DNA of 64,000 bases. Origin: Octopus sinensis. Its lineage: Eukaryota. Each line of letters starts with the position of its first letter. The first letter of the stretch is position 1. A program made the translations under genes and the position numbers. Of the stretch, positions 5,591-56,589 are shown in pieces. Under the pieces are notes generated by a model. It had not been told where the DNA came from, ran no database searches, and saw only the letters and a program-made list of their open reading frames with translations. The stretch is taken from assembly GCF_006345805.1 (NCBI RefSeq), contig NC_043010.1, forward strand, positions 43,896,001-43,960,000, given 5' to 3'.

Positions 5591-5714
5591 TTGCTGGGGT
5601 GGTAGGTGGGGTGCACCACAGAACCACACACTCGTGACTGTGCCTGGAACAGCGTTATATTCTTAATCTACAAACAACTATCCCCTTCGGACTAAATACA
5701 ACCCCCTCCTCCTA

Positions 5715-6506
5715 ATGACTGTCTCTACAACATCCTGCAACATAGCAACACATACATGCACAACTACATGCATACATGCATGCACACACATACATACACA
5801 CAGGAATGCACACATACCTAACCCACACAACCCCACGCACACACAGACATGCACACATAAACACACACATGTACACAACCACATATACATACACATACAC
5901 GCAACAAAATGCACACATAACTCAACACATCTCATTCACACAGACATATACACACGCACGCTCATACATACACATACACACACATATATACACGTACACA
6001 CACTCACACATGTATGCACACATACCTCCCACACACTCATACAGACGCACACAATTACACACACATGGGCATAAACACATGCATGTACACACATAAGCAC
6101 GCGCACACATGCACACACAGGAATGCACATATACCCCCACACAACCCCACACACACAAACTCACATATATACACAAACGCACACAATATATACGTACACG
6201 CACACACATGCACACATACATGCGCACACACACACAATTGCACACATACCTATCACTCACAACCCCACGTATACACACCTGCATACGCACACATATATAT
6301 GCACACGCACAGATACATGCACACGCACAGATACATGCACACACAACTACATACATGCATATGCAAATGAACCCACACATACCTCCCATACATACGCAAC
6401 ACATACATACATGGACACACACACGCACATACAAGCACACACACAGTAATGTACATTTACTCCACAAACACAATCCCACACACAGCCTCACGCATACGCA
6501 CATACC

Positions 6507-6538
<32 letters not shown>

Positions 6539-6545
6539 TACCTCC
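5715..6545. repeat. Cryptic (CA/TA)-rich compound microsatellite with internal duplicated blocks
   Basis: Degenerate CACA/CATA runs; the block cacacaggaatgcaca..acccacacaacccca recurs at ~5797 and ~6115. Source of the H/T and V/C-rich pseudo-ORFs. Confidence 0.85.
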
Positions 6546-6880
6546 TTCTCTTGCACTCACCTGCCTTAGAAAGAACTTTTTCCTCACCCATTCCCTTCTG
6601 GTCATTTCAATATGTGACGCGTGTGAATCGTTGGTGATTTTCTTTCTCTGTCTTCCCTTTGAACTTTTTCTATATTTCTGATGAAGAGCTCTGCTCAAAA
6701 CGTGAAATCCTCTTTCTTTTCTTTCCTTTCCTGGGCATCCAATAACACTGTACATGTACCAATCCTCACGTTTTTTCTTGCTTGTTCTTGTTTGGATTGA
6801 CGAATGTTTTGTTGTCCCTTTTTGTATCACCTAGATGTCCGGATGTTTTGCGTTCTTGTTCCATTTTGTATTGATATATA
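6545..6880 (+). mobile_element. Short Penelope-like terminal-repeat-type element with a degenerate minimal hammerhead motif (6674-6708)
   Basis: ATTT-CTGATGA-A-GAGC TCT GCTC-AAAA-CGT-G-AAAT; same family as 39440-39640. Confidence 0.55.
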
Positions 6881-7090: not shown

Positions 7091-7236
7091 TATTAGAGGG
7101 AAACCACTATGTGGACACCTTTATGCTAGAAATAGATCTGCTATGGTCTTACCATTTGAGAACATTTCTTAGTGGTAATACCATAGCGGATCTATTTCTA
7201 GCATAAGGGTGTCCACAAAGTGGTTTCCCTCTAATA
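7091..7236. mobile_element. Fold-back element (64-bp inverted arms, 18-nt spacer), MITE-like, embedded in TA repeats
   Basis: 7091-7154 is the reverse complement of 7173-7236 with 4 differences. Confidence 0.7.
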
Positions 7237-7377
7237 TGTATATATACACACACACACACACACACACATATATGCACACATATTTATATATGTGTGTGTG
7301 TGTATATACATGAATATGTGTATATATCTATATATGTGTGTGTATGTATATATGTATGTGTGTGTATGTATGTATGT

Positions 7378-7420
<43 letters not shown>

Positions 7421-7522
7421 ATGTATGTATGTATATATATATATATATATGAATGTGTGTGTATGTATATGTGTGTGTATGTATATATGTGTGTGTATAG
7501 AGAGAGATAGAGAGGAGCGTGA

Positions 7523-7766
7523 GGAGACACCCCTTCAGTCATGAATGACCATGGGATTGCACCTAGAAAGTTACCCTCTGAGGCACAAGTATGGGCAAGG
7601 TTGTTTGTGGAAGGCTCACAACTCATTTCTACAGCTGAGTTAACTGGAGCAATGTGAAATAAAGTGTCTTGCTCAAGAACACAACATGCAGCCCAATCCG
7701 AGAATAGAACTCATGACCTCACGGTCGTAAGCTCAATGTTCTAACCACTGAGCGATGCACCTTCAC
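7523..7766 (-). mobile_element. tRNA-derived SINE (same family as 31709-32030)
   Basis: Minus strand starts GTGAAGGTGCATCGCTCAGTGGTTAGA (A box) ... GAGTTCTATTC (B box), then TTGAGCAAGACACTTTATTTCACATTGCTCCAG, shared with the 31.7 kb copy. Confidence 0.75.
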
Positions 7767-7775
7767 ATATATACT

Positions 7776-7823
<48 letters not shown>

Positions 7824-8252
7824 TGTGTATGCGTGTATGTATATATATATATATGAATATGTGTGCGTGTATATATATATATGAATATGTGTGCATGTGT
7901 ATATATATGTATGAATATGTGTGCATGTATATATATATGAATATGTGTGTGTGTGTATATATATCTGTTCGTTGCTATTTCTGCTTATCCTTGGATCTAT
8001 GCCTATTCATGTCTATCTGTTTATCTTTCTATAAAACTCTGTTTATTTTAGAATTTTCCTATAACTTTTACTCATTTATACTGTTTTTGTATATTTTTTC
8101 GTTTTTTCATATCTTTCTTTACCTTTCTACTTCTTTTAATTCTAATGATCTTTATGATTACTTCTAATTATCAAAAGTACCCAATGTCTACACTGTTCAC
8201 CTCTTTTAGCCTGTTTTCTTACTTCTTTTCATTGATTTTGTTCTTCTGGCAG

Positions 8253-8327
8253 AACATTCCTAGAGAGATGGTGTCAGACAATGTGGTGCTTTGGACTGAC
8301 GCAAGTCATGTGGAGTATCTTCCTGTG
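8253..8327 (+). CDS. orb2: CPEB exon (75 nt, phase 0-0): NIPREMVSDNVVLWTDASHVEYLPV
   Basis: Long polypyrimidine tract ending ttcttctggcAG (8251-52), strong donor GTAAGT at 8328. In frame with the next exon. DNV..TD....LP spacing resembles the CPEB2/3 segment that precedes the DR exon (EDNVFRTD...LLPLQ|DRS, recalled). Confidence 0.75.
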
Positions 8328-10786: not shown

Positions 10787-10886
10787 GACCGAGGAAATAA
10801 TTTTGACAGCATGCGCTTCACAGGTTTAGAGAGCCGGCTGTTGGATTTAATGAGGAGTAACACTGAGTCTCATGAGCACTACAAAG
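10787..10886 (+). CDS. orb2: CPEB exon (100 nt, phase 0-1): DRGNNFDSMRFTGLESRLLDLMRSNTESHEHYK-G
   Basis: tttcAG acceptor, GTGAGT donor at 10887. Homologous to the vertebrate DRSRMYDS...SLENSLIDIMR...KG exon. Confidence 0.93.
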
Positions 10887-17340: not shown

Positions 17341-18821
17341 TGTTAGTATAACATTGTCTATGCAAACCTGCTTTACTCAGTCTTAGTATTTTTGAAAACA
17401 CCGGTTTTATTGATTATTTATTATCTTAATTATTTTCCCTATTTATCTAGGCATTGATTGCAAAAAGGATTATTTTCTCCTTGGTTTCATCATATTCAGT
17501 TTGAGATAATGATAGTTTTTTTTTTTCCCAATTTGAAACTGTTACCAAAACTTTTTCCAGTTGTACATGTGTATCAATTCTCTAGTTGCTTTATAATACC
17601 ACTAACATCTTCCTTTTTTTTTTTCTTTTTATATAGAATCTGTTATTTAGATATAATTTTTTTTTTATGTATATACTTCAGCATGACTATACAAGTGCAA
17701 AAGATAAGAAAAATTTGGAGAGAATCTTATACTTTCCAATCTTACTACTTCACTTCCTTCCCTTATGTATTTATCCCTTATGTATTTAAGTTTATTCAAG
17801 GAGCAGCTCTTTTTCAAGTCTGTTTCAATTGATGCATACACAGCAGTGTGTGATATGTGTCATTTAAATATTCACAAAACTGAATGGTTTTATTTAGTGA
17901 TTAATGAACAGTGAAAAACATTGCATACATTGGATCACAATTTTTATTCTTTTATTAGTTTTAGGTATTGGACTGGGGTCATGCTTTTCTGCCATGTTCA
18001 AAGGTTTTAGTGTATCATATTGACTTCAGTAACTATTTTAGTCTGATACTTATTTTAGTGATTGTTTTTTTTTTTTATTGAATGGTTGAGGAATGCAACT
18101 CAAGACACCAGTATACACAGACATACACATTCTCACACACAACCAAACTTATATACCTGCAAGAGGTTGCATACAGTTTCTGTTTGCCTAATTCTACTTA
18201 CAAGGTGCCACACCATGGGACCAAATTCAGAACTACATGGCTACGATTCAAACTTCTTTCCCTCATGGCTATGCCATGATGTTGACAGAATTTAAATATC
18301 TTAGAAGTTAGATGACATTAAAAAGTATAGAAGTGATTTTTATAACATTTCTTAACATTCCTTAGTAATTGCAGAAAAATAGTTTCAAATCATACAGCTA
18401 ATTACTTCCTTTTCATTAGTTAGTTTTTAAGTTTATAACGCATGCAGGTTTTGGCTGATCTGCTTTCTTGGCAGCTCTAGAAACTAACTTGAAGATTCTT
18501 GAAGATTGATGTTAACAGGTGGGAATCTTAAGATTTCTTCAATGTATATTAATTTGTCATTTTTCAAGCTTAATGTGCACCATATGCAGAGTATACAGGA
18601 AGATATGCACAACAATTTTTTTTTTTTTGCATTGGGAAAGGAAAGTGGTGACCCTTCCAATTTTTTAATTTCATGTATATAGTCTACAATTTTTACATAT
18701 TCTTTGTTTTTCCACCTGTTAATTACATACACACATGCATATAGTGTGGTTTTTGTGTATGTGTTCATATGTGCGGTGTTAAATCACTAAAGTTTTACAA
18801 TTTCTACTTGGCTTACTGCAG

Positions 18822-18845
18822 CACGTGCTTACGGACGAAGAAGAG
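18822..18845 (+). CDS. orb2: CPEB 24-nt microexon (phase 1-1): (A)RAYGRRR(G), counterpart of the vertebrate CPEB4 neuronal microexon
   Basis: ttactgcAG|CA CGT GCT TAC GGA CGA AGA AGA G|GTATTT. Branch-point-like CACTAA at ~18785. Frame-preserving between exons ending 10886 and starting 31326. Peptide matches recalled ARTYGRRR at 7/8 positions. Confidence 0.9.
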
Positions 18846-20799
18846 GTATTTTCACAATTTTTTCACACATTCCTTTTATATTCTTATTTATATCCCTACC
18901 ATTCTAGAGCCCTGTTTTGGTTATCTGTCCCTTCAGCTCCTTTGCTTTCACACTGGTTGTTTTTCTGTTTTCATTCTAAATATGAATTTAAAAAATGTTG
19001 TAGTATTTTTGTTATCCAATTTCTCTTTCTTTCTCTTTCCTCCTCTCTCTTTCCTCCACTCTATTATTTCTGGATTTTTGTTGGTTCATGTTTGTTGTTA
19101 ATATTTTACGCATGACTTTGGAAGTTTTCTGTTCTTTGCTAGATCTGGCTGGGAAAGAATTATTCGAGCGATAAAGTACTTCAATTCATATCTGGAGAAA
19201 GATCTATTTAATATTTCCCTTGGAAAGGATTGAAAGCATTTAAATCTTAGATACATCAGTTATTGAAATCTTTCACCTGACAGTTTGGCATTGATTTTCC
19301 TATTTGTCTTTTGCTAAGGTTCTATTTAAATTCTCTTGGTCATCATTAAATGAAACTTAGGTAAAATTACCTTAATGTTGATCAGTTTTGTTTCTTACGT
19401 TAAGTTAATGATGATAATATTGACACTAAAGTAATAGTCTCAGAGATAAAGATTGGCTGGTTGTCTTTTGTCATATTTTACAAAATTCTTGAGGTGTTGA
19501 AGTCCTTGTTCATCTCTTTCAAGCAATCTTGTTTCATTTGATCTCCAGTCATATATCAAATACCTGTGAAATAAGGAGGTTTTCCTTCTGCCTTATTTGG
19601 GCCTTTCTTTCTAAAAGGTCAATTATTTTAAGTTTTAGTCAACCTAATAAGTGTTATAAAGAGGTACAATTCACCTCCATGAACAGTTGATGTGTGTTTC
19701 ATTAACTTGTTGTGCAAGCAGAAATCTTCTCAAAGGAAATTGATATTGCTCTTATCTTATTGCTAGAGCTAATCCTATGTTGATGGATACCTATCATCAG
19801 AAAGTGTCAGGTATTATCTCTGTCTCAGTTACATGAGAAGTGATGTATTACTTGGGTAATTCACCATCTTTATATTAACTATATTGTTATTGAGAGAGTG
19901 ACTAGTGACAACAGTGTATGTCGTTTTACACTTACAATTGCTGAACACTGATGTTGAAATCTGTTTTATTTTTCTATTCTGCTTTGACATTGTTTGATTT
20001 TAGTGTTCATATTTAAGAATATGCTAAAACATAGAATGTGAAGTTTAGTTTTCTTCTCTTTTCTTTTTTTAAAGAGATTAGTATTAAAAGGGAACACCTA
20101 GCTGTATATTTCTTGTATTTTCAGCCCAAAGTTAACCAAGTTAAAGTAAAAATAATTCAATTATTTAAAAAAAAAGAAGACTAGAGATTAGCAAATGAAG
20201 GAGAGATGCCACAGATTTTCTTTATATGTATATATAGTTTGAGGTTGCAGTGGCCTTGGAGATGAGATTTTAATGTTTATTTAAATTCTCTTGGTCATCA
20301 TTAAATGAAACTTAGTAGTTCTTGAGTTGCTGAATTTACAGTTGACTTCAGGTCTTTTGCCATATTTTAGACAAGATAGTTAACTCTGTTTTAATTTAGC
20401 TTGTTTGCAAATAGATGTTAGCCACATAAAATGTTAACTGGCTATTACTCGTAACATTCTATCCAGAGATATATTTGTCCCTTGTCTACCTAAATATTTA
20501 GTGTTTTGAGTTATTTGCATAAGTGTTTTTGAGAACCATTGGGTTGATTACACTGTACTGAAACTTGTCTTTAGTGTAAGAGCAAGTCAGCCAAACAGGA
20601 ACCATTCTTCTTTAAGTTTTTTATTGCATGAATCCTAAATGTGTAAGAATGAAGCATACAGTAGGAGGAATAAAATTCATGTTGTCATGTCCCTAACTTT
20701 TTCAAAGTTATTAATCTTACAAATGAAACTGGGTCATGTAATGTGCAAATTGCTTGTATTCTCTCTGTCCCTCTCTCTTTTTCTCTCTCTTTATATATA

Positions 20800-23990: not shown

Positions 23991-25499
23991 ATTACCATTA
24001 TTATTTGTAGCATTTCACAGTGGGCCAGAGAGTGCAAAACTATCAAGAGTTTGTTAGCACCTTCGAATGATCTGTTTGAACAGTTACAAAAAGTACCTTT
24101 TTGAACACTTCACTTTTAATTAAGTCACCTGTCTTTCAACTTCAGTCATTCTTCTATTCAAACATCCAGTCACAAATACCACAATCTTCATATTGTTCTC
24201 TTGTCTTTTTATGTATTTCAAAGGCTAACTATTAATATTTTTTCTTGCTCCCACCTCTCTCTTTCAACCCAAGATAATTTTCTTTAATTTGTAATGTGGA
24301 TTCTTTGACTTTATACCATACTAAATTTTCAGTCAGTACCCCTTACTTTATCTATACTAGTGATCAGATCATCAATGTATTGCTTTATTTTTTAACAATT
24401 GTTCCTTGTAAGTGTTTTACATTCAAATATCAAATATATTATTTCTCTTTTTTCATGTACAATTTTGATATCTCTAGTTCTTCCACTTTTACTTTTCGCA
24501 TTTGTCCCTGCATGTTGATAATTCCTGCATTCACTACCATGAATTTCCTTTTCCTTCTTAGTAAGCCTATATATATGGGGTCCTTAGACTGGTTTACCAA
24601 AGATTTTCTCTGCCATGTCAGATGTTACCCTCATGAGGGATGATGTTACTCTCAGACCAGAGGCCTGACTCAAATGCTTGCAACTATATGGTCTCCACTA
24701 AATGTACTCAGTTGCAAGGTGGCAGGGTTAAGCCAGACAAACAGATTTAGGTCTGCCTTCCAGCACTTGACATCAGCAAAGCTTCTGTCATGTCTTGCAT
24801 GAAAATCTGACTGTTGTCTGACTGTAATCTCCCCTTGTCTCCTTTTCCTCAGCATGTACTGATGATTCTCTCTTTCTCTCTCTCTCTCACACACACACAC
24901 ATCCACACACATCCAACAAATTCCATCTGACCAGTGCAGACACGGAAAAGTGGATGGTAAATGAGAAGAAACGATGCTGGTGTATGTACCATCATCATTT
25001 ATCATCTGTTTTTCTATGCTGGTATGGGTTGGACAGTTTGGCAGAAACAGACAAACTAGAGGGCTGTGCAGCCCTTTATAATGCCAACCACTGACCATAA
25101 TATATTGAGTATTTCTTTCATGGCACCAGTACTGGTGAAGTCACTGAGTAACCCCTCAACTGAGTGGGGTATCATATTGAGGGATATGAAAGTAAGATAG
25201 ATGTACAGGAACCAGTATCTTGCTGAAAAAGTGAGTATATGGCTTGCATGTCTGCAAAGAAAGAGAGAGAGATGTGAGGTCAAAGCACAAAGTGAATATG
25301 GGAAAATAAAATAGAAGAACTGAAAAGATGAGTAGGTAAGTGCTCCAGAGTGAAAATAGTGTAACATAATTAGAGATGGAGATTAAGTTGGATGTAATGA
25401 ATTTTAGTTAATGAGGAGAGGGAAATGAAGAAAGGAAATAGAAGTGGATCAGGATGGAGGAAGTAACAGGAGACAATAATAAGGAAACAATGTTGGGAG

Positions 25500-26250: not shown

Positions 26251-27099
26251 TATGGGCAGCTAGTCTTAAATTTCCTTGTTATGAGAATCCTTTTATCACA
26301 CCTATTCAAAGAATCCACCATTAGCATCAATGGCTACTTCAATACAAGGTCAAAAGCATTGAAATGCCTGAATCAGATGATCTTTATCAATTTAGGATAT
26401 AGTGCTGGTTATGGCAGACTTGAGAGATTGGGTAGTGTTGTGGGAGTGTTGATTGAGATCTTGTGCGCTAGGAGGCTATGTGTCTGGGAGAACATGACCA
26501 TGAAATTGGCTTTTCATAATAGCATTTTCATGCCTCTTTCTTTCTAGAATCATTAAATGCAAGTGTGCCATTATCCTTTTGTACACACTTCTCTTCCACA
26601 TCTTAATTTTTCTCTGATACACAACCTTGCAATCTGAAGTACCTCATGACTTTGGTTCTTATGCCATAGAACAGTAGCAAACCCCTTCTATTCTGCTTCT
26701 CCCTTTGCTAAACAGACCTGTCTCCTTGCTTCTCTTCTAGGTGCTTGATATTTCTTTGACTTTCCCCTCAGCATTTTCAATCATCAAACATAACTAAATA
26801 CGGTTATGTCCATTAGATTTTATTAATAATTGGCTAATATTTCTCTAAGTGGTTATAAGTTTGTTAATTAGTTATATAATTATTTCTGCTGCTATCTTAA
26901 CTTCACCCCAACTAGATTGACTTCAACTTCCATCATCTCTTAATGCTTTACTTAAGTTGTTTTGCTCTACTCTTTTGCACACATGGATGACTTCCAACAT
27001 CATTGCAATGTGTCATTCATGCATATCCAGCAGAGAACTGATCAGCTCTTCTATTAATTCTAATCTTTTTCTTTATTACTTTTATGCTCCTTTGATCAA

Positions 27100-28340
27100 T
27101 CACAAACTCAAACATGACAGGAACATCCTAGACAATTCCAACAATAACAACAGCAGGAACTTGGAGATACTCCAATTCTCCAAGAGGAAGTTGAAGAAGC
27201 AGTGCATATGCTCAAAGTTGGGAAATCCCCAGGAGTGGATAACATCCCTTCAGAGTTCCTAAAACATGAAGGGCCAAAGCTTATCAAGGTACTAACAGAT
27301 ACCTGTTAGAAGATATGGGAGATGAAGGAGTGGACCCAATCATTGATGATACGGATTCCCAAGGAAGACAATTTAAGATTCTGCCTGAATTAGCGAACAA
27401 TCAGCCTCATTAGTCACCCCAGCAAAGTATTGCTAAGCATTCTGCTAAACAGACTTAAGGGAAAGGTAGAAAATATCCTTGAAGATGAACAGGCATGATT
27501 TAGGTCCCAAAGGAGTACTGTGGAGCATATAGTTTACATTAGACTTCTCTGAGAAACATTGACAACACAAGTCTGACGACTTCAAAAAGGCATTTGACAA
27601 TGTTTGGTATGGTGGATTGTGGTAGGTGATGAAGAATCATAACTTTGACAACAACCTCATTGAAGTAATCCAAACACTGTATGAAAAGTAACCCATGCAG
27701 TGCAGTTCTCCTGAACAACAGCATCAGAGAATTCTTCAGGACAACAGTTGGTGTTAAACAAGGATATATCCTCTCTCCAGAGTTTTTCAGCATCTTCCTG
27801 GAGACACTTTAAGTCCTCCACCACTCTATTTCCATTGGAGGATGGCCTATTTCCAACGTGCACTTTGCTGATGATATTGACCTCTTTGGAAGCAGTGAAT
27901 CATAACTGCAAGAGCTTACCACCAAAATGGAAAAAAGCTACTGGAAGGTATGAAAGAGATCAACCCAGAAAAGAGCAAAATCCTGGTTAATAGTAAAAGC
28001 CAAAACACAGCAACCAACATCATGCTAAATGGAGAGAGACTTGATAGAGTGGGTCACCTTCAAGTACCTCGGATCCACTTTGACCAAGGATGACAGATCT
28101 CAAAAGCAGATAACAAAACTCAGTTTAGCTTCTGCTGCCATGATAAAGCTGAACAACATATGGAAAAGCAATTCCATTTGTTTTCCAACAAAACTTAGAG
28201 TGTACAAGACCCTGGTGACTTTGATCCTTCTGTATGAGTGTGAGAACTGAACTCCCTCAGTGAACCTGATATACGTGACAAAGATCAATGGTAATGGCTG
28301 GCTATGAAAATGTCTAGAGTGGTACCCCAACAACTGTCTG
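27100..28340 (+). mobile_element. Decayed RTE-type LINE RT region
   Basis: Hand translation: EEVEEAVHMLKVGKSPGVDNIP...RTISLISHPSKVLL; ORF 28029: FKYLGSTLTKD...LLYECEN. Confidence 0.8.
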
Positions 28341-30469
28341 CATCAGTTAAGGGATCTTGATGATGATACTCCTTCGATATTTAATTCGACCACATATTTC
28401 ACTCTTAAGGGTTGCCTCCTTCATCTGTGCACCTTCCATCCTTCCTTTCTCCTTTTTATTTTTCTTGTTCTACATATATTTCCATTGGCTCCCTCCTTTA
28501 TACCTAAAACTAAATCAATTTTGCACTTTTCTTCTAAGCTCTCTTTTATGTTCTCTATCTATCTAAACAAAACTATCTGACAAACGGGAATGTGAACAGA
28601 GAAATGGACGCTTTTTATCAAAACTTTTACCAAATAATCACTTATATCCTGTAGATTGAGTGTATGTAAAGATTTGTTGGAAAAAAATTTCCAAGGGATT
28701 GGGGAGAGGAGTTTCGGAAAATTCACAGGACCTGACACTTCTCCTTTCATAGCTTTCTAGAAAATAGGAATTTTTAAATAATTTTATACAAATACCTTTC
28801 AAACAGTGTAGATTACAATTACAAAGAAATTTGTAGGCAAAATTTTTGTAAGGGGGCAGAGAAAAGGAGTTTCTGGAAAATGAAGTTTCAAATCAGACAG
28901 CCCACATAAATTGGAATTCCTCCATTTTGATGGGGATTTTTTCCAATGTTTTTCACCAAAGTCTTCAGAATGATGGGAAGTATCTTTTCACAAGTTAAAA
29001 AACAAAAAAGTTTTGAAGATTCTTTTTTTTTTCACTCTTGTCATCCCCTCTCCACCTCAGTTTTTTTTCACTACATGAGAGAAACATTTTCGGTTTTAAA
29101 AAAAATTTCAGAAGAAAATGTGTGATTTAAGGGAGATTTGGTTGTTGCTTCTAGCACATCCCAAAACCTCCCTCCTTGTTTCTTTCTCACACATCTATTG
29201 ATATTTTTCAATATTTTTCTCCCCATAAACAAAGTTTTGGGAATGATGATGTCAAAGTAACACGTGTAGTCCAACTTGAGCAAGGCCATGTTAGGTGTGT
29301 GTAAGAAAAAAAACACCTAAAAAATCTTTAGTATTCATATTAATTTGTCAAATGAAATGCTTATTTGTTCACATTATTTTGAATTATTCAGGTTCAAGAG
29401 GGTTGTCCACAATATTTGCTTGTAACTTTGTAAACTTTTTACATACAGATTTGAAATTTTGTCAGTAGGTGCTTTATATACCACTGGTTTATAGTTATGT
29501 AATTTTAGCTGATATTGCTGAGTAAATTTGACTTTTATGGACAGGTGTAAAAGCAATAACATTATGGGTAAACACTAAAATTGAAATTCTCAATGCATCT
29601 TACCTGTTTGATTTATTACTAAAATTATACCAGATCGCAACTGACAAAAATTTTGCCAGATGAAGTACATTAATTTGAATTAATTAAAATACAATTGGTA
29701 CAAAATTTTATTCTTTCGGTAAATATTTTGTACCTCGGTGTGGAATAATTTTTTTCCACAGTTTTTTTCAGATGCATTCAACGTATCTGACCTCCAAACA
29801 CGCCACAAGCCACATTTTTCCAGAAAAGATAAGTGGGAGGGGTGGTAGGTGCTTCAAAGTTTCTCACTAAGGGAGTTTTGTTTCACAGGTCTTTTTTACT
29901 TTTCCAGGTTATTTTGCATACTTTCAACGAATGTGACATCAAAATCACGTGTAAACAGCTCCTTTTTTCCAGAAAGGGAAAGATTTGGCTGCTATTTCTA
30001 GCATGCCCTGCTACCATGTAACAGTTATTTGAGTTCACACCAAAATATTTGCCAACTTTTTCTTTCTTAATATGGAAGTCTTTATGGAAGTCTTTATGGA
30101 AGTCAGTATTTTCTCTGTTGAAATCCACCTCAGCGAGGTCACAGATCAAGTGGAAACACATCAGTCACTGTTCCCTCTTGGCAGGACAAAGAAATTTCCT
30201 GCTGTCTTTGCAAGCAACAAGTGGGTGGGTTTGGTTTCAAATCCAGGCAGGGCCAAATAAGGTCCTACAAGTTATTATTTATAATAATAATAATAATAAT
30301 AAGTGGTATTATATTGGGGTTGAAAGAATTTGAAAACAATAGAAACTTTTAAATGTTCACTGGTTTTTATGAAATTTTGGGGTTACTAGACTTGAGTTAA
30401 TGGAAGTTAATTAGTCCAATAATGATTTTCAAAGTTAGCTTAAAAGTTAAATTGTTAACGAAAATCACA

Positions 30470-31225
30470 AGTCCCTTCTGGGAGATGACCCTGCTCGATA
30501 TGTAAGAAGGGTGTTGGTAGAAACTCCATGCACTCTACTCAGTGTGAGATTTGGACACATAAGAGGTGCAATGCTATCAAAGAAAGGTTAGCGGAGAATA
30601 TAGTCTTTGTGTATGGCAAATGTGCAGATACAATAAGCACTAAAAAGGCACAGACAATTGGCTCCTTCAAATGCTGGTGGGTAGGGATCATTGTATTAGT
30701 GGATAGCTTCTGTTACCAAGGAAACCAAATTAGCAGTGTTGGAGGAAGTTCTGAAAGAGTAGTTGCTAGGATAAGAACTGGCTGGACAAAGTTCAGAGAG
30801 CTTCTGCTTTTGTCGGTAACTAAGGGCCTCTCCCTCAGAGGGAAAGGCATAATGTATGATGCCTATGTATGTACAGCTATGATACATGGCTGTGAAACAT
30901 GGACTTTGACTACAGAGGACTTGTGAAGGCTTGAAAGAAATGAAGCTAGCATGCTCCACTGGATAGGTAACGTCAGTGTGTATGCATGACCGAGTGTAAA
31001 TGATTTAAGAGGAAAACTGGGTATAAGAGGCATCAGATGTGTACAAGAGAGAAGACTGTACTGGTTTGGTCATGTGATGTGTGTGGATGAGGATAGCTGT
31101 ATAAAGAAGTTCTGAGCTCTAATTGAGGAGGGTACCAGTGGAGGGGCCAGACCCAAGAAGATGTGGGACAAAGTAGTGAGAAAGGATCTTCAGATATTGG
31201 GCCTCACTGAGGAAATGACCAGAAG
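30470..31225 (+). mobile_element. RTE LINE C-terminal fragment immediately upstream of the RRM1 exon
   Basis: ORF 30528-30926: RIRTGWTKFRELL...KGLSLRGKG..YDAYV...HGCETW; then WFGHVM and GARPKKMWD motifs. Confidence 0.85.
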
Positions 31226-31325: not shown

Positions 31326-31508
31326 GAAAGTCCCCATTTGGTTTCAATGAAGATAATCATCTGCTTGACGATACAAGTCTGGACCAAACTGTTCCCAGTC
31401 TGAGTTCTCCTGCCCGTGGTTCCCCCAATCCTCCAACTGCTCAGGAGAGGTTGGAGCGTTTTTCACGGAAAGTCTTTGTTGGAGGTTTACCCCCAGATAT
31501 TGATGAAG
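31326..31508 (+). CDS. orb2: CPEB exon (183 nt, phase 1-1): GKSPFGFNEDNHLLDD...QERLERFSRKVFVGGLPPDIDE, start of RRM1
   Basis: tttcAG acceptor; RNP2 motif VFVGGL. Donor GTTCAA at 31509 is weak, but it is required by phase and sits at the conserved DIDE| junction. Confidence 0.95.
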
Positions 31509-32526: not shown

Positions 32527-32616
32527 AGGAGATTACATCAGCATTCCGACGTTTTGGTCCTTTAGTGGTTGATTGGCCTCACAAAGCTGAGAGCAAGTCT
32601 TATTTTCCACCTAAAG
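32527..32616 (+). CDS. orb2: CPEB exon (90 nt): EEITSAFRRFGPLVVDWPHKAESKSYFPPK-G (RRM1)
   Basis: T-rich acceptor ttttAG, donor GTAAGC at 32617; diagnostic VVDWPHKAESKSYFPPKG motif. Confidence 0.98.
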
Positions 32617-33652: not shown

Positions 33653-33771
33653 GCTATTGCTTTCTGCTGTTTCAAGATGAAATGTCTGTGCAGTCATTGA
33701 TTGAAGCCTGCATCACTGATGATGATAAACTATACTGGTGTGTGTCCAGTCCTACTATGAAAGATAAACCT
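33653..33771 (+). CDS. orb2: CPEB exon (119 nt): GYCFLLFQDEMSVQSLIEACITDDDKLYWCVSSPTMKDKP (RRM1)
   Basis: tttgttAG acceptor, donor GTAAGT at 33772; RNP1-like KGYCFLLF. Confidence 0.98.
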
Positions 33772-34433: not shown

Positions 34434-34548
34434 GTCCAAATTAGACCATGGAACTTGAGTGATTCAGATTTTGTGATGGATGGTAGCCAACCATTGGATC
34501 CGCGTAAAACAATATTTGTTGGTGGAGTTCCAAGACCACTAAGAGCAT
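34434..34548 (+). CDS. orb2: CPEB exon (115 nt): VQIRPWNLSDSDFVMDGSQPLDPRKTIFVGGVPRPLRA (linker/RRM2)
   Basis: ttttAG acceptor, donor GTAAGT at 34549. Not in the ORF track (too short); read by hand. Confidence 0.98.
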
Positions 34549-35790
34549 GTAAGTATCTTTCTCCTTATCCATTTTTGTTATTTAGTTTAGTCAAGGTTGC
34601 TCATATGTGTTTATGGTTCTGAGCTATTAACCATAAACTCAGAAGCTAGTTTTATCCACAGCCATTGAGTTGTACTTCTTAAACAAAGCTCATTGTTTAG
34701 CTTGCTTGCTTTCTATCCGAGCACAGATTTAATTCAACATATTAAAAGTATATATTTTAAATTTGAAATTGTAGAAGATGAAAAATTTATCCATGTTGAT
34801 TGTATTGAGGTTATGTCTACCAGTTTGTTTATGCAAACTATTATAAGTATTTTAAGTTTTGAAGAAATGTAAGGTGTGATAGTAACTGATGTACTGGTAT
34901 ATGAATCATGATAGTCTTTTCTACTGTGGGAATGAGCTAGTCAATTACATTTACTCCAGTCATCAACTGGTACGTATATTATTGACTCCAAAAGAATGAA
35001 AGGCAAAGTACAGAGTATCAAATTCCTACATATCAAGTAAACCAATATCTTAGCACCGAGACTTCGTGCTTTTGTTAATAATTGAGAATTTGGTCTTCAA
35101 ATTCTTTATCATTTTTCTAAGTTTTGAACTTTTCTTACAGTACTCCGACAGATCTTATTTTGAGAACCAAGTCATTAGCATTGAATATTCTCAAGAAAAA
35201 CTTTTCAATACTTATAACCTCAAGAATTATAATGAATAGAAATAGAATTTAGGGCAGTATATGTACAGTTCACCCTGAATACCTGGTAATTAACATTATT
35301 GAGGGGACCATATAAATTGACTAATTGCAGAAATATGCAGTAATTTTTATTGAAAACACAAAACAAGATAAACAACTGCATTTTTGAAGGCAATTTACTT
35401 TCTTGTCTATCTTTAATTACTTTTCTGTTAAATCCATGAAGGTAATTAAAAGTAATAGACAAGAAAGTTAATTAAAAAAAAAGACAATTGTAGTAAGCTT
35501 AGAGTATTGACACAGTCAAGGGCAGATATTGAAAACACATCAAGAACTTAACAGATAATTGTGATAATGATGATTTCTGACATGGGTGCAAGGCCACAAA
35601 TGGATTAATTTGGGAGAGGGAACAGTTGGATGAGATGTAAAAGCAATTATATAGAGAGTTTGAAATAACTGTAACAAGAGACTTAGACTGATACTCAACT
35701 GATTCTGCCACCTACCATTCTATTACAGTTATGATTTACACTGAATATCTGACTGAGTTCTATGGATAATCTCACTTTGCTCTTTTTCAG

Positions 35791-35972
35791 TGGAGTTAGC
35801 TTTGATCATGGATCGTCTTTATGGAGGTGTTTGTTATGCAGGCATTGACACTGATCCTGAATTAAAATACCCTAAAGGAGCTGGCCGTGTAGCTTTCTCA
35901 AACCAGCAAAGTTACATTGCTGCAATCAGTGCTCGCTTTGTTCAACTGCAACATGCCGATATTGACAAGAGG
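35791..35972 (+). CDS. orb2: CPEB exon (182 nt): LELALIMDRLYGGVCYAGIDTDPELKYPKGAGRVAFSNQQSYIAAISARFVQLQHADIDKR (RRM2)
   Basis: tttttcAG acceptor, donor GTGAGT at 35973; matches ORF 35790..36053. Confidence 0.98.
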
Positions 35973-39906: not shown

Positions 39907-40580
39907 ATGAAACAATTAAAAACGAGAGAAATTCTGAGCTGTGCATATCACAAATGTCAACAATAGTAAAGCGAATGGCATGAATGTGAGAAACCCTACA
40001 ACCAGAAGTGGTCAAATGAAATGGACGATTTTGCCATAGCAAATAGAAATAGCAGCTAGTAACCATAGTGAAGTGGGAGCAATATATATATATACATATG
40101 TAACATACAATGCCTGTATTCATCAAATGATATTTATCTCCCACTGGATTGAGTAATTTTTTTGTAAGTCTTATCAACAAGTAAACAGTACAATTTGTAT
40201 TTGTGTGTGTGTGTATACACATGTCTCCTTGTCTTGACATCTTGTGATAGTTGTAAACAAATGACATCATTATACAAATGGTGTTGTTCATTTGCAATCA
40301 TCTGTGAAATCATGTGCTGTTATTGTCATGTTCAACAGACCAAGGGAAATATTATTTTGCTTGGAAACAGATTGAGGTGGGCAACAAGAAGACCATCCCT
40401 CAAATATAACAGTATCTGTTTCAACACACAATTTCACATAAGGAATCTTGCAAAACAAATACATAACAGATAGAATGTTTAACATTACATTTTTTTCTAA
40501 ATAACCATTCCTTTTATTATATTTCTGCTGCCATGTTACATTTTTCACCAATGTCTATTTTCAATTATATTGTGTTGTAG

Positions 40581-40808
40581 GTCGAGGTGAAGCCTTACGT
40601 CTTAGATGACCAAATGTGTGATGAGTGTCAAGGAGCTCGCTGTGGGGGAAAATTTGCCCCCTTCTTCTGTGCCAATGTGACTTGTCTGCAGTACTATTGT
40701 GAGAATTGTTGGGCCACCATTCACACACGGCCTGGCCGAGAGTTTCACAAGCCACTTGTCAAAGAAGGGGCTGACCGACCACGGGCTGTCCCTTTCCGAT
40801 GGTGCTAG
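40581..40808 (+). CDS. orb2: CPEB last coding exon (228 nt incl. TAG): VEVKPYVLDDQMCDECQGARCGGK...HKPLVKEGADRPRAVPFRWC* (ZZ zinc finger)
   Basis: ttgtAG acceptor at 40579-80; C/H zinc ligands present; stop TAG ends at 40808. Confidence 0.98.
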   Translation, partial: VEVKPYVLDDQMCDECQGARCGGKFAPFFCANVTCLQYYCENCWATIHTRPGREFHKPLVKEGADRPRAVPFRWC

Positions 40809-43800
40809 TTCGGACATGCCAACACATAAAAATACCAGTCCATGTTGGCTGTATTTGAAAGAAGTAGAATTGAGTTCTAGATGGATGAACACAAATGTTT
40901 TAGAAGAAGAAGAAGAAGAAGAAAAAGGAAGCAAAAGAAAAATGAAAAAAGCCTGGAATGATAGCTCGGCGTCTAGATGCATTGCCAGACAGATCAATGT
41001 ATTTGGCTAACTTTCCATTGTTAACCCTATCTGGTTATCATCTGAACACTAGCTATCAGAGAACAAATTAATCTGGCAACATCTTTGCTTGCTTGTTTTC
41101 ATTCATTGCGATCTTATATTACTACTAGGAGGCATTGAATTTGTTTTTCTAATGAGAAACCTTTTTCCTTTTTGTATTCTTTGGAAATTTTTAAATTATA
41201 TTTTAGGTATTATTTTTTTAAAGTGTTTTTACTTTTCATTATAAATATATAGGTATATGTGTGGAGTTTAACACACACACACACATACATAAGCATAAAT
41301 ATATAAATATATATATGTATATATATATTTATGTATGTACATGTATGTATATATATTTGTGTATGTGTGTGTGTGTGTGTATATATATATTATATATGTG
41401 TATATATATATATATATATGTGGTTGTTATTTATTTTTGTTTTATATGTATAAGCAAATTCATTGCAAAAAAAAAACAAAAAACTTGTAACTCATGGAAA
41501 GATACAAGAACTTGAATTCCTCTCTATTTGAAATAGAATGCAAGTATTGCTTGGTTGCTCATAGATCTAGAAACAGCAATCTACAACTCGTATGTCTATT
41601 CCATATTGTTTTATGAAATTAATAATATATTAAATGAGATAAGAGGTTGCTGGCCAACCAACCAAAGCTATGGTAGTTGTTTTGCTTTGCTTATTTGCTG
41701 GCACAGTAAATGTGACTTGGTAAAACAATTCAAGTGTTCTATAACCAATTTTGGCACTTCATTTAGAAGAAAACTATTGCAGCAGTCTTTAAAGTCTGCT
41801 ACATATAAAACAATTCCTCCCAAGGTTTTTTTTCTTTTTTTTTCCCCCATCTTTTGGGTTGGCTTTTTTTTTTTAAATATTTGTGGTCAGGCCAATATTT
41901 TGATAACTCTATATTTGATCAACCTTAAAAATTTGGTCTCTTAATTGTGAAGACAAATGGGTTATATTATAATTGGCCTCTTTTCCTGCTCACTCAGTCA
42001 CACTCATCCTTTCTTCAAAGTTTTTTTAAAAGTATTATATTTTATTTTTTTATGCATTTTTCTTTTTGTAATATTTTTATTTTGCTTAGAGTATATGCAT
42101 AGATGTGTGCACAAGCATATTTGCATTTCTCTAGGTACTTGCCAGTTCCTCTCACATACTGCCATTTGTTGAAACTAATATTACTACTATCAACTATACC
42201 ACCATTAACAATAATAATGATAATAATAATAATAATGATAACGATGATAATTCTGTAAAATGAATTACATTTACCACAATATATTCCAAGTATGTCCAGT
42301 AATGCAACAATTGGCTTAACAAATGAAGTGAACAAAATATAAAATAAACTGAAACCAATAACAAAGATAGAAACTTGCTCTTCTCTCTAAGAACACAAAT
42401 TTGAATGGAAAAGTTAAAATCCCAAACCTAAAACATGTTCAATGTCTAGGATTTGGGAGATGAGGGATGTGTCATTATGAACCAAAGCTATGTTATATAT
42501 TTTAAATGAAAAATATTCAGAAAATGTGTTAAAGACTTCAACTATATTATTACTACTATTACTGCCAACAAAAACAACTATATCAACAGCAACAACTTAA
42601 TTATTGAACCAGTAGATATAATGATATTTTATAGACTGTTGATACATTCTATATTGCCAGAAATGAAATGACTGAGCAGAAAAGGTATTGGACTAACAGA
42701 CTTATTTATTGTGAGTTCCGAACTTGCTGCAATGCCTTGTGCTTTTAGCTATGGAGCTTAACTTGGACTTAGTTCACATAGATAAACAGGTCTGGGGACA
42801 TTGTTTAGTCTTTATATCAACTCAGAGAACTACTTCACTGAATCTTTCCCAAGAAAATGTTGCATTTGAAGCATCTTTATTGGCAGTGTTACCAGTTCTT
42901 TGCAACTCAGTGACCAATACTACCATTCTTTGTGTTTTGATACCTCTAGATTCTGTGAACAGTAGAAGCTGTTGTCTTTGGTAGATTATGCAATGTTGGA
43001 GTAAAGATGTTTTGTAACTGTTTATCAAAGTGAGATGGGGTTTACTAATAATAAGCATATAACATTTTTCTTGACTGACTTTCAACTTATGAACTTCAAA
43101 ATGGAGGTAGCTACAACTTTGATCAGTTTGTTTGGTTTCACCTCTGGATATTGGAAGTATCAGGAGAAGAAATTATACTCCCCTTGATGCAACTAGTTTG
43201 GTTTTAGACTTTAGTTGGCTTGATCTCTAACCCATGGAGACCATTATTTAGGCAGTCTTACTTCTGACTAATCTAATAAATTTTATTGGATTCATGGAGT
43301 AAGGTTTGTTAGAAAAGCTCATTTCTAGTAAATCTACTCTTGAACCACATCATGCCATGCCATTCCTTTCACTTAGATTATATGTGGATGGTGTGCACAC
43401 ACATACAGGTGTACAGGCATTCCTTATGTTACAAAAGCATTGCATTTGTGAAACCTGTTTCCCGTTGACTTCCATGTCACATGGAAGTTGTGGGAAAATA
43501 TGTTTCATGATACAAAATTTCACATTTATGGCAAAATTTGGGGGAATATAATGCTTCCATAACATAAGAAATGCTTATACATACATTTGCATAGTAGCAT
43601 GCAAGATTTGTTGATTGTAATATTTGAATATGTTTATATATTTGTAAGTGTGAAACACACACATGCATGTGTGTGTTTATGTAATGGCATGGTTACATAA
43701 TTCTGGGTGACAGTGACTATTTTGCAACGTTGATGGATGGCTTACTTATATGGCATTACATGTGTCCATAATTTCTGTCTGTTATTCTGCAGGCATTACC

Positions 43801-45515: not shown

Positions 45516-45997
45516 GAACTCTCCACTTTTTGTTTCTCATCTTCAATTTGATTGATCTCACTGACTTGTGTTGATAAAATAATTCTATCTGTTGCTGTAT
45601 GTAACAGTAACCAACACTTCAAGCTGGTGAAGCTTGGGGATGTGAAGCATAACTTGACTGGATACGAGGTTTGCAAGAGATATATTTCATGGAGAACACC
45701 AAGAAAGAATTATTAACAAAGGTTTTTTTTTATTAGTGAATGCAAAGTAAATCTTTGAGAGCAACAACAACAACAGCAGAACTAGCAGCTAAATGTCTAT
45801 TGTATAATGTTTAGGCTATTTGGAAAATATTTTTTTCCTAAAGACTTTTTTTAATATGGATTTATATAGATATTCAAATTTTTTAACTTCACATGCACAT
45901 AAAAACCCCTTTCTCAAATATAAATGCACAATATTCATCAGCGCTTATTGCAAAAATTCTCCTTCATATATCTACATTGTCATACATATACCTGCGT

Positions 45998-46047
<50 letters not shown>

Positions 46048-55723: not shown

Positions 55724-56070
55724 GGGTGCAGGAGTGGCTGTGTGGTAAGTAACTTGCTTACCAACCACATTATTCTGGGGTCAGTCCCACTGTATAGCGT
55801 CTTGGGCAAGTATTTTCTAGTATAGCCTCGGACCAACCAAAGCCCTGTGAGTAGATTTGATAGAAAGAAGCCCATCGTATATATGTGTGTGTGTTTGTTT
55901 ACCCACCACCACCATCACTTGACAACTGATGCTGGTGTGTTTGTCCCTGTAACTTAGCGGTTCGGCAAAAAGTCCGATAGGATAAGTCCTGGGGTCGATT
56001 TGCTCGACTAAAGGCGGTGCTCTAGCATGGCCTCAGTCAAATGAGTGAAACAAATAAAAGAATAAAAGAA
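55724..56070 (+). mobile_element. tRNA-derived SINE with internal microsatellite and LINE-like tail
   Basis: GGAGTGGCTGTGTGGTAAG head, GGGTCAGTCCC B-box-like motif, tail GCGGTGCTCTAGCATGGCC..TGAAACAAATAAAAGAATAAAAGA. Confidence 0.75.
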
Positions 56071-56153
56071 AAAGGAATCCTTTATATATATATATATATA
56101 TATGTATGCACTACATATATACATTAACATTATATATATGTATGTATGTGTAT

Positions 56154-56189
<36 letters not shown>

Positions 56190-56219
56190 CACACTACATA
56201 TATATACACTATATATATG

Positions 56220-56279
<60 letters not shown>

Positions 56280-56500: not shown

Positions 56501-56554
<54 letters not shown>

Positions 56555-56589
56555 TATACTATGTATACTATATATATATATTGAGATAT

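What the first reader, a model, noticed from the sequence alone, without database searches (positions are those of the whole stretch)
18822..18845. Hidden 24-nt microexon ARAYGRRR: apparent invertebrate counterpart of the autism-linked CPEB4 neuronal microexon
Seen: inside a 20.4-kb intron, cAG|CACGTGCTTACGGACGAAGAAGAG|GTattt is exactly 24 nt and phase 1-1. Splicing gives ...EHYK-ARAYGRRR-GKSPF... with no frameshift. Established: vertebrate CPEB4 has a 24-nt neuron-specific microexon encoding ARTYGRRR, between the same two homologous segments (..DIMR..K and GQSSLF..LDD..ERYSRK), and CPEB2/3 have similar exons. Its reduced inclusion is linked to idiopathic autism and it modulates CPEB4 condensate behaviour. 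The same length, phase, position and 7/8 residues make chance very unlikely. Inference: the switch predates the protostome-deuterostome split and may tune condensation or aggregation of this Orb2-like memory-associated protein in cephalopod neurons. I know of no report of it in a mollusc but cannot search; automated annotation would probably miss it.
Basis: partly seen in the sequence, partly recalled or inferred. Interest (0 to 1): 0.92.

Follow-up and report, generated by a model that had tools for sequence, protein, structure and literature searches.

The report
Octopus CPEB microexon, real but annotated
The 24-base exon is real and matches the autism-linked CPEB4 microexon of vertebrates, but it is already in the public gene models of three octopus species, so the only possibly new point is how ancient it is.

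Summary
At 18822-18845, cAG|CACGTGCTTACGGACGAAGAAGAG|GTATTT is a 24-nt, phase 1-1 cassette. It inserts ARAYGRRR between ...EHYK and GKSPF... of a CPEB2-4/Orb2-type gene. Chance is excluded: 0 of 2000 shuffles come close.

The window is Octopus sinensis chromosome CM016872.1. The exon is not hidden. RefSeq isoform X1 (XP_029645168.1, 991 aa) contains it, and X2 (983 aa) is X1 minus exactly these 8 residues. The same X1/X2 pair exists for O. bimaculoides. Both O. vulgaris models seen include the exon.

Homology to vertebrate CPEB4 microexon 4 (ARTYGRRR), the "B-region" of CPEB2/3, is solid. The octapeptide sits at the same position in annotated proteins of a brachiopod, spiders, a horseshoe crab, mites, a hemichordate and amphioxus. 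In Lingula it is again a separate 24-nt, phase 1-1 exon. The orthologous introns of a limpet and a clam lack it. Between two octopus species the exon lies in a 214-nt block of perfect identity.

A pre-bilaterian-split origin is therefore well supported. Neural specificity and function in octopus remain untested. The likely role is a splice-gated arginine block that completes an RRRGxS kinase site and adds condensate-stabilising arginines. I found no paper stating the deep conservation.

The parts
8253..8327 (+). 75-nt coding exon (NIPREMVSDNVVLWTDASHVEYLPV), phase 0-0, flanked by ag and gtaagt. It was seen only in cephalopod proteins.
   Evidence: Searches give the coordinates and splice sites. 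The peptide is present in P0121/P0127 and in the second cephalopod transcript P0122, and absent from the other taxa aligned.
10787..10886 (+). Upstream constitutive exon (DRGNNFDSMRFTGLESRLLDLMRSNTESHEHYK + G). It ends in phase 1 with donor GTGAGT.
   Evidence: It aligns to the ...SLIDIMRAE..K segment of vertebrate CPEB2.
18793..18821 (+). 3' splice region of the microexon. It contains a candidate branch point uuuuAc (A at 18797), a short mixed pyrimidine tract, UGC at 18817-18819 and the acceptor AG at 18820-18821. The nearest upstream AG is at 18791-18792.
   Evidence: Read; motif positions are. No UCUCUC element lies upstream, so the bipartite SRRM4-type enhancer described in PMC12628316 is not evident.
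18822..18845 (+). 24-nt cassette microexon, phase 1-1, encoding ARAYGRRR.
   Evidence: It is present in XP_029645168.1 (P0127) and absent from XP_029645170.1 (P0128), which is otherwise identical. It is identical in O. bimaculoides at L002:46806.
18846..18851 (+). 5' splice site GTATTT, a weak donor with no G at +5.
   Evidence: The other donors of the gene are gtgagt, gtaagc, gtaagt, gtaagt and gtgagt, plus one atypical gttcaa at 31509.
18776..18990 (.). 214-nt block of perfect identity between O. sinensis and O. bimaculoides. It covers the microexon plus 46 nt upstream and 145 nt downstream, and is presumed to hold intronic splicing-control sequence.
   Evidence: It is the third-longest perfect run in 28 kb aligned at 90.7% identity. 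The seven longest runs all contain exons. It does not form a stable RNA structure (z = +1.74) and gives no Rfam match.
31326..31508 (+). Downstream constitutive exon (GKSPFGFNEDNHLLDD...RFSRKVFVGGLPPDIDE), running into RRM1. The Ser codon at 31331-31333 is the predicted acceptor of the junction-spanning RRRGKS motif.
   Evidence: The motif logic comes from PMC4767366.
32527..32616 (+). Coding exon within RRM1.
   Evidence: The spliced product is the exact C-terminal suffix of P0127. Pfam RRM_7 scores 131.5 bits.
33653..33771 (+). Coding exon within RRM1.
34434..34548 (+). Coding exon at the start of RRM2.
35791..35972 (+). Coding exon within RRM2.
40581..40808 (+). Last coding exon (CEBP_ZZ zinc-binding domain), including the stop codon.
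   Evidence: Pfam CEBP_ZZ scores 77.4 bits.

Best explanation
Window 18822-18845 is a genuine, alternatively used 24-nt cassette exon of the single Octopus sinensis CPEB2-4/Orb2-type gene, which RefSeq names 'CPEB3'. Isoform X1 includes it and isoform X2 skips it. It is the ortholog of vertebrate CPEB4 microexon 4, also called the 'B-region' of CPEB2 and CPEB3, and was inherited from the bilaterian ancestor.

Including it inserts ARAYGRRR into the disordered linker about 50 residues before RRM1. Two consequences are expected, both inferred from vertebrate work rather than shown here.

1. The three arginines complete a basophilic kinase motif, R-R-R-G-K-S, whose serine lies in the next exon. 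Only the exon-containing isoform would then be phosphorylatable there. In mouse CPEB3 the kinases are PKA and CaMKII.
2. The exon supplies 4 of the 21 arginines of the N-terminal disordered region. In mouse CPEB4 these arginines contact a histidine cluster and keep condensates reversible instead of aggregating.

Shown here: the exon, its frame, both annotated isoforms, its conservation with its flanking intron, and its phylogenetic spread. Inferred: neural regulation, the regulators, and both biochemical effects.
For: Sequence and frame.

Not chance: 0 of 2000 shuffles reach 6/8 identity against an observed 7/8.

Locus identity: 33,001 bases are 100% identical to GCA_006345805.1 CM016872.1. 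The spliced product is the exact C-terminal suffix of XP_029645168.1. Pfam finds RRM_7 and CEBP_ZZ.

Both isoforms are annotated: X1 minus ARAYGRRR equals X2 exactly in O. sinensis and in O. bimaculoides, and the O. vulgaris models include the exon.

Selective constraint: the exon sits in a 214-nt perfect-identity block between two octopus species whose introns are otherwise 90.7% identical. This block is longer than those around several constitutive exons.

Orthology:
- The same position and a near-identical peptide occur in Lingula (ARPYGRRR), spiders (ARSYGRRR, ARNYGRRR), Tachypleus (ARGFGRRR), mites (ARNLGRRR), Ptychodera (TRTYGRRR), Branchiostoma (ARTYGRRR), fish CPEB4 (ARNYGRRR) and vertebrate CPEB2 (ARSYGRRR).
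- In Lingula it is a separate exon, cag|CTCGTCCTTATGGAAGACGCAGAG|gtacac, with 24 nt and the same phase. Five of its 6 nucleotide differences from octopus are synonymous.

Vertebrate function:
- The arginines of the CPEB4 microexon interact with the histidine cluster and prevent aggregation (PMC11711090).
- B-region-dependent PKA/CaMKII phosphorylation occurs at GRRRGRsS (PMC4767366).
- Octopus keeps GRRRGKS. Its N-terminal region has 21 Arg and 22 His.
Against: - No RNA reads were examined. The X1/X2 isoforms are computational gene models, so alternative use rests on annotation.
- Transcripts of a second cephalopod from Logan assemblies (P0122, P0135-P0137) show only the skipped form.
- Neural specificity is untested.
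- The upstream intron has a UGC next to the AG but no UCUCUC element, and Lingula lacks the UGC. An eMIC/SRRM4-type enhancer is therefore not evident.
- The octopus histidine patch is weak, with 5 His in 25 residues.
- Amphioxus lacks the downstream Ser (RRR-DNYDG), so the kinase site is not universal.
- A limpet and a clam have no such exon in the orthologous intron. The exon is therefore dispensable in some molluscs.
Confidence: 0.85

Rival explanations
1. It is a chance pseudo-exon: an AG...GT pair in a 20-kb intron that happens to be open and to resemble the vertebrate peptide.
For: The intron contains 29 open AG-N24-GT candidates, so short open windows are common.
Against: - Identity is 7/8, while the next best candidate scores 2/8 and 0 of 2000 shuffles reach 6/8.
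- The exon is included in gene models of three octopus species.
- It sits in a 214-nt perfect-identity block.
- The same exon is present in Lingula.
Confidence: 0.01
2. It arose by convergence. Octopus and vertebrates would have independently gained an arginine-rich microexon at a hotspot in the same intron, as proposed for most fly/mammal microexon coincidences.
For: - Torres-Mendez 2022 found only four fly/mammal eMIC exons in equivalent positions and favoured convergence for most of them (PMC8797185).
- The exon is absent from the orthologous introns of Patella and Mactra and from the annotated insect, gastropod and bivalve proteins seen.
Against: - The length (24 nt), phase (1-1) and position are the same, and 6-7 of 8 residues are shared.
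- This holds across octopus, brachiopod, five chelicerate lineages, hemichordate, amphioxus and all three vertebrate paralogs.
- Nucleotide changes between octopus and Lingula are mostly synonymous.
- Repeated loss is far more parsimonious than six or more identical gains.
Confidence: 0.04
3. It is a real, ancestral exon but not a neuron-specific switch in octopus. It would be included constitutively, or variably without tissue logic, so the analogy with the autism-linked neuronal switch fails at the regulatory level.
For: - Both O. vulgaris models seen contain the exon.
- In the mite Brevipalpus the peptide is fused into a large constitutive exon.
- No UCUCUC...UGC bipartite enhancer is evident.
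- The 2026 20-species study that included O. bimaculoides called only two bilaterian-ancestral neural exons and does not mention CPEB (10.64898/2026.09.05.749416).
Against: - X1 and X2 are both modelled in two species.
- A second cephalopod's transcripts show skipping.
- The donor is weak.
- The 190 nt of perfectly conserved flanking intron are typical of regulated cassettes.
Confidence: 0.2
4. The function is purely the one the first reader proposed: tuning condensation or aggregation of a prion-like Orb2-type protein through arginine-histidine contacts, with no role for phosphorylation.
For: - The CPEB4 microexon mechanism (PMC11711090).
- The GRRR core is the only part invariant in every lineage, including amphioxus, which lacks the downstream Ser.
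- The exon gives 4 of 21 arginines in the N-terminal region, similar to 4 of 18 in mouse.
Against: - The octopus N-terminal region has only a weak histidine patch and is dominated by Ser, Gln and Gly.
- The G-x-S that follows the exon is conserved in octopus, Lingula, chelicerates, hemichordate and vertebrates.
- In CPEB3 that site is phosphorylated only when the exon is present.
- The two roles are not exclusive.
Confidence: 0.25

Closest known systems
Vertebrate CPEB4 microexon 4 (24 nt, ARTYGRRR), neuron-specific and under-included in idiopathic autism (Parras 2018; PMC11711090)
   Same: - 24 nt, phase 1-1.
- Same position between the ...DIMR..K exon and the G-x-S..F...LDD exon.
- 7/8 residues identical.
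- Host gene of the same subfamily (RRM_7 + CEBP_ZZ).
- Contributes about one fifth of the arginines of the N-terminal region.
   Different: - Octopus has one CPEB2-4-type gene in the data seen, rather than three paralogs.
- Residue 3 is Ala, not Thr.
- One Ser follows (GKS), not two (GQSS).
- The histidine cluster partner is weak.
- Tissue specificity and regulators are unknown.
- No 17-aa alternative exon was found upstream of it.
'B-region' of mouse CPEB3 (exon 7) and CPEB2 (ARSYGRRR), which supplies the PKA/CaMKII consensus (PMC4767366)
   Same: It is the same exon under another name. The junction motif GRRRG-x-S is retained as GRRRGKS.
   Different: Phosphorylation of the octopus serine has not been tested. 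The residue at -1 is Lys rather than Arg or Gln.
[quoted passage not shown]
   Same: The feature is identical. The window's spliced product is the exact C-terminus of X1, and X2 is X1 without the 8 residues.
   Different: Nothing differs; this is the existing annotation of the finding.
Bilaterian-ancestral neural microexons in APBB1/2/3 and MADD (10.64898/2026.09.05.749416) and the four fly/mammal shared eMIC exons (PMC8797185)
   Same: A very short, in-frame cassette retained at the same gene position in protostomes and deuterostomes.
   Different: The CPEB exon is not on either list. It was not seen in the annotated insect proteins retrieved (insect introns were not scanned), and its neural specificity outside vertebrates has not been shown.
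Drosophila Orb2A/Orb2B isoforms
   Same: It is the same gene subfamily, with a prion-like N-terminal region and isoform-dependent assembly.
   Different: Per the review read (PMC8011179), the Orb2 isoforms differ at the N-terminus rather than by this linker microexon. None of the insect proteins retrieved carries the octapeptide. The Drosophila Orb2 protein itself was not retrieved.

Membership tests
CPEB2-4 B-region / microexon 4 | The host gene belongs to the CPEB2-4/Orb2 subfamily (two RRMs of the RRM_7 type plus a CEBP_ZZ domain). | tested here: met
   Pfam RRM_7 at 131.5 bits and CEBP_ZZ at 77.4 bits on the window's spliced product. The best relatives are all CPEB2/3/4 or orb2.
CPEB2-4 B-region / microexon 4 | Exon length 24 nt with canonical AG/GT borders. 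| tested here: met
CPEB2-4 B-region / microexon 4 | Phase 1-1, so that inclusion and skipping are both in frame. | tested here: met
   X1 minus the 8 residues equals X2.
CPEB2-4 B-region / microexon 4 | Position between the ...(L)(I/L)D(I/L)MR...K exon and the G-x-S..F...LDD...ERFSRK exon, just upstream of RRM1. | tested here: met
   BLASTP alignments to vertebrate CPEB2 and the CPEB4 construct sequence in bioRxiv 10.1101/2023.03.19.532587.
CPEB2-4 B-region / microexon 4 | Peptide consensus x-R-x-(Y/F/L)-G-R-R-R. | tested here: met
   ARAYGRRR is 7/8 identical to ARSYGRRR (CPEB2) and to ARTYGRRR (CPEB4).
CPEB2-4 B-region / microexon 4 | Cassette behaviour: transcripts both with and without the exon exist. 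| tested here: inconclusive
   Both forms are in RefSeq models of two octopus species. These are predictions, and no reads were available here. A junction search of JGI contigs found nothing.
CPEB2-4 B-region / microexon 4 | Neuron-specific inclusion. | not testable with these tools
   No tissue RNA-seq could be accessed.
CPEB2-4 B-region / microexon 4 | A junction-spanning basophilic kinase motif (RRRG-x-S) that exists only when the exon is included. | tested here: met
   Sequence only: GRRRGKS with the exon against HYKGKS without it. Phosphorylation itself was not tested.
CPEB2-4 B-region / microexon 4 | A histidine-cluster partner in the N-terminal region (the CPEB4 condensate mechanism). 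| tested here: inconclusive
   The 732-residue N-terminal region has 22 His. The densest patch has 5 His in 25 residues (544-568), which is much weaker than a cluster.
eMIC/SRRM4-dependent neural microexon programme | An upstream bipartite enhancer (UCUCUC followed 1-50 nt later by UGC) close to the 3' splice site, a long AG-exclusion zone, and dependence on Srrm234-eMIC. | tested here: inconclusive
   UGC lies at -5 to -3 (18817-18819), but there is no UCUC element within 150 nt upstream, and the AG-exclusion zone is only 27 nt. Lingula has no UGC at its acceptor. Dependence on the factor is not testable here.

The most novel reading that the evidence does not exclude
The CPEB2-4 B-region microexon is a bilaterian-ancestral, neuron-regulated cassette. 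That would make it one of only a handful of alternative exons kept for more than 550 million years at the same position, length, phase and near-identical sequence. It would still work in octopus neurons as the same activity-linked switch as in mammals, through kinase gating, condensate stabilisation or both, and it would have been lost independently in gastropods, bivalves and insects.

I found no such statement in the searchable literature. The most recent 20-species survey names only two ancestral neural exons, neither of them in CPEB.
Probability: 0.4. Interest if true: 0.6.

Novelty: already known. Interest (0 to 1): 0.35.

Why it matters
As a sequence feature it adds nothing, because the exon and both isoforms are already in RefSeq for this very assembly.

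The wider picture from this check is more useful. The autism-linked CPEB4 microexon is present as the same 24-nt, phase 1-1 exon in a brachiopod and an octopus. Its octapeptide is also in annotated proteins of chelicerates, a hemichordate and amphioxus. Comparative studies report only two to four alternative microexons shared between protostomes and deuterostomes, so this would be a rare deeply conserved one.

If inclusion proves neural in octopus, it would give an invertebrate system with a single CPEB2-4 gene in which to separate the two proposed roles of the exon: phospho-site gating and condensate stabilisation.

Tried and rejected
- The first protein search could not see full-length cephalopod proteins because of the tool's length filter. 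I prefixed the window's product with the N-terminus of a clam homolog purely to pass that filter, and scored only window residues. This is what revealed the RefSeq isoforms.
- Look-ups of genomic loci for Mercenaria, Strongylocentrotus and Actinia returned 'not on record'. The spider gene was too long to fetch. Echinoderm, cnidarian and spider exon structures therefore remain unchecked.
- A scan of JGI contigs for octopus cDNA spanning the junction, allowing a gap of 0-24 nt, found nothing.
- I tested whether the conserved 214-nt block is an RNA structure, such as an editing duplex. It is less structured than shuffled sequence (z = +1.74), and Rfam gives only sub-threshold noise. Rejected.
- I looked in the octopus intron for a second alternative exon like the vertebrate 17-aa exon or the 20-40-aa inserts of chelicerates, hemichordate and P0001. 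There was no credible tblastn match.
- RBFOX (GCAUG), Nova (YCAY) and UCUC motif counts around the exon are no higher than expected by eye. They were not used as evidence.
- Torres-Mendez et al. 2019 (Nat Ecol Evol) is not held, so I could not check whether its supplementary lists include this exon.
- The 2008 paper on CPEB in octopus retina concerns immunoblots only and says nothing about this exon.

Full report
**The observation.** The sequence at 18820-18847 is ag|CACGTGCTTACGGACGAAGAAGAG|gt. The upstream exon 10787-10886 ends in phase 1 (...GAG CAC TAC AAA G|gtgagt). The next exon starts at 31326 (ag|GA AAG TCC CCA TTT). Splicing the 24-mer in gives ...SHEHYK-ARAYGRRR-GKSPFGF...; skipping it gives ...EHYK-GKSPFGF...; both stay in frame. 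The intervening intron is 20,439 nt. It contains 73 AG-N24-GT sites, 29 of them open in phase 1-1. Only the one at 18822 resembles the vertebrate octapeptides, at 7/8 identity against 2/8 for the next best. None of 2000 dinucleotide-preserving shuffles reached 6/8. The 24-mer is unique in the window.

**What the locus is.** Downstream open stretches give five further exons (32527-32616, 33653-33771, 34434-34548, 35791-35972, 40581-40808), all with canonical splice sites. The 346-residue product carries Pfam RRM_7 and CEBP_ZZ, which is the CPEB2-4/Orb2 architecture. A further 75-nt exon lies at 8253-8327. The large N-terminal exon is upstream of the window. The window is 100% identical over 33,001 bases to Octopus sinensis assembly GCA_006345805.1, chromosome CM016872.1.

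**The exon is not hidden.**
[quoted passage not shown] It is 991 aa and 100% identical across the region, including ARAYGRRR.
- Its 90% cluster holds O. sinensis X1 (XP_029645168.1/69.1, 991 aa) and X2 (XP_029645170.1, 983 aa), and O. bimaculoides X1 and X2. An older accession, XP_014781584.1, is listed with the O. bimaculoides X1 entry.
- It also holds two O. vulgaris models that include the exon.
- X1 with ARAYGRRR removed equals X2 exactly in both species. The window's spliced product is the exact C-terminal suffix of O. sinensis X1.

**Constraint within octopuses.** The O. bimaculoides ortholog (L002) carries the identical exon and splice sites. Over 28 kb of aligned gene the two species are 90.7% identical. 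The seven longest runs of perfect identity all contain exons. The run around the microexon (214 nt, 18776-18990) ranks third, ahead of several constitutive exons. It comprises 46 nt of upstream and 145 nt of downstream intron. This block is not a stable RNA structure (z = +1.74) and matches no Rfam family. That fits single-stranded splicing-control sequence, as is typical of regulated cassettes.

**Distribution across animals.** The vertebrate side was verified with tools.
- CPEB2 proteins read ...LN-ARSYGRRR-GRSSLF....
- The CPEB4 constructs in bioRxiv 10.1101/2023.03.19.532587 read ...DIMRAENDTIK-ARTYGRRR-GQSSLFPMEDGFLDDG.... That paper also states that CPEB2 and CPEB3 contain the same microexon.

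At the same alignment position, annotated invertebrate proteins carry:
- ARPYGRRR in Lingula anatina X1;
- ARSYGRRR or ARNYGRRR in five spiders;
- ARGFGRRR in Tachypleus;
- ARNLGRRR or PRNLGRRR in the mites Tetranychus and Brevipalpus;
- TRTYGRRR in Ptychodera flava;
- ARTYGRRR in Branchiostoma lanceolatum;
- a divergent RGYGKRQ in two nemerteans.

An intron-less JGI transcript of an unidentified animal, whose closest relatives among the fetched proteins are molluscs, also has ARPYGRRR.

In the Lingula genome the peptide is encoded by cag|CTCGTCCTTATGGAAGACGCAGAG|gtacac. This is a separate 24-nt exon in the same phase, and 5 of its 6 nucleotide differences from octopus are synonymous. In Brevipalpus the peptide is fused into a single large exon.

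The orthologous phase-1 introns of the limpet Patella caerulea and the clam Mactra antiquata contain no such exon. The gastropod, bivalve, chiton and insect proteins seen lack the peptide. The simplest reading is one origin before the protostome-deuterostome split, followed by several losses.

**How it most likely works.** Two effects of this exon are documented in mammals.
- In CPEB3, the B-region supplies the recognition residues for PKA and CaMKII (GRRRGRsS). Peptides and protein lacking it are not phosphorylated at these serines (PMC4767366).
- In CPEB4, the four arginines contact a histidine cluster and keep condensates reversible. Without them the protein aggregates (PMC11711090).

Octopus retains GRRRGKS. 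Without the exon the same serine is preceded by HYKGK. The G-x-S is conserved in Lingula, chelicerates, hemichordate and vertebrates, but not in amphioxus. The exon gives 4 of the 21 arginines of the 732-residue N-terminal region. That region has 22 histidines but only a weak histidine patch. I therefore expect a splice-gated arginine block that both creates a basophilic phospho-site and adds arginine contacts. Both effects are inferred; neither was tested here.

**Regulation.** The acceptor has a plausible branch point (uuuuAc, A at 18797), a modest pyrimidine tract and a UGC directly before the AG. The donor GTATTT is weak. No UCUCUC element accompanies the UGC, the AG-exclusion zone is only 27 nt, and Lingula lacks the UGC. 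The sequence is therefore compatible with an eMIC/SRRM4-type microexon but does not demonstrate one. In humans, SRRM4 dependence of the CPEB4 exon is itself only partial (PMC12628316). Neural specificity in octopus could not be tested with these tools.

**Comparison with the literature.** I found no paper that reports this exon outside vertebrates.
- Torres-Mendez et al. 2022 list four fly/mammal exons in equivalent positions, none in CPEB or orb2.
- A 2026 preprint covering 20 bilaterians, including O. bimaculoides, names only APBB1/2/3 and MADD as bilaterian-ancestral neural exons.
- The 2019 eMIC paper is not held.

The explicit evolutionary statement may therefore be unpublished, although anyone aligning RefSeq isoforms would see it.

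**Verdict.** As a feature it is already known, because it is annotated in the source assembly. Interest is modest. It rests on the exon being a rare, deeply conserved alternative microexon tied to a disease-relevant mechanism.

Noticed in passing
window 8253-8327 (+): A 75-nt, phase 0-0 exon encoding NIPREMVSDNVVLWTDASHVEYLPV lies just before the DRGNNF exon. It is present in octopus proteins and in a second cephalopod's transcripts (P0122), but absent from every other mollusc, brachiopod, arthropod or vertebrate protein aligned. It looks like a cephalopod-specific insertion.
   Followed up: partly
window 34548/35791 exon junction: The split codon T|TG gives Leu in ...RPLRA-L-ELALIMD.... The other taxa seen have Val here (RPLRAVELA). 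The second cephalopod shares the Leu, so this is a cephalopod substitution in an otherwise highly conserved RRM2 segment.
   Followed up: partly
window 27035-27155, 35150-35256, 28276-28375, 24505-24603, 19004-19103: These are intronic runs of 99-121 nt that are perfectly identical between O. sinensis and O. bimaculoides and contain no annotated exon. The background identity is 90.7%. Their function is unknown. The 19004-19103 run abuts the microexon block and is CU-rich.
   Followed up: no
window 40809-41000 (3' UTR start): Perfect identity between the two octopus species continues past the stop codon (runs 40536-40828 and 40904-41000). Frith 2023 (PMC10735318) reports a 3'-UTR segment of Cpeb2/3/4 conserved across bilaterians. 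Whether it lies here was not checked.
   Followed up: no
window 27715-28247, 30489-30923, 57149-57757 (+): Long open stretches in the introns and flank may be transposon-derived. They were not searched against any library and were not examined.
   Followed up: no
relatives: P0001, P0029/P0047, P0292, P0294, P0301, P0382: Chelicerates, the hemichordate, amphioxus and the unidentified JGI transcript carry an extra 20-40-residue insert immediately upstream of the octapeptide. This recalls the 17-aa alternative exon of vertebrate CPEB2 (GRLSYPHPGTDNLLMLN). Scorpion and Parasteatoda X2 models keep this insert but lack the octapeptide. Octopus shows no such exon.
   Followed up: partly
relatives: P0280 (Lineus), P0282 (Tubulanus): The nemertean proteins have a divergent version (..GRGYGKRQ-GKSPFGF) at the microexon position. 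The Tyr-Gly and the GKS are kept, but the arginine triplet is degraded.
   Followed up: no
window 19185-19299 (+): A sub-threshold Rfam hit to U6atac (16.3 bits against a gathering score of 33, E = 0.39). It is most likely chance.
   Followed up: no
window-wide, e.g. 5667-6678, 7207-8164, 45900-46400, 56066-56700: Dense CA/TA-type microsatellites produce long spurious open frames (HTHTH..., YIYIY...). These account for many entries in any ORF list of this window.
   Followed up: no
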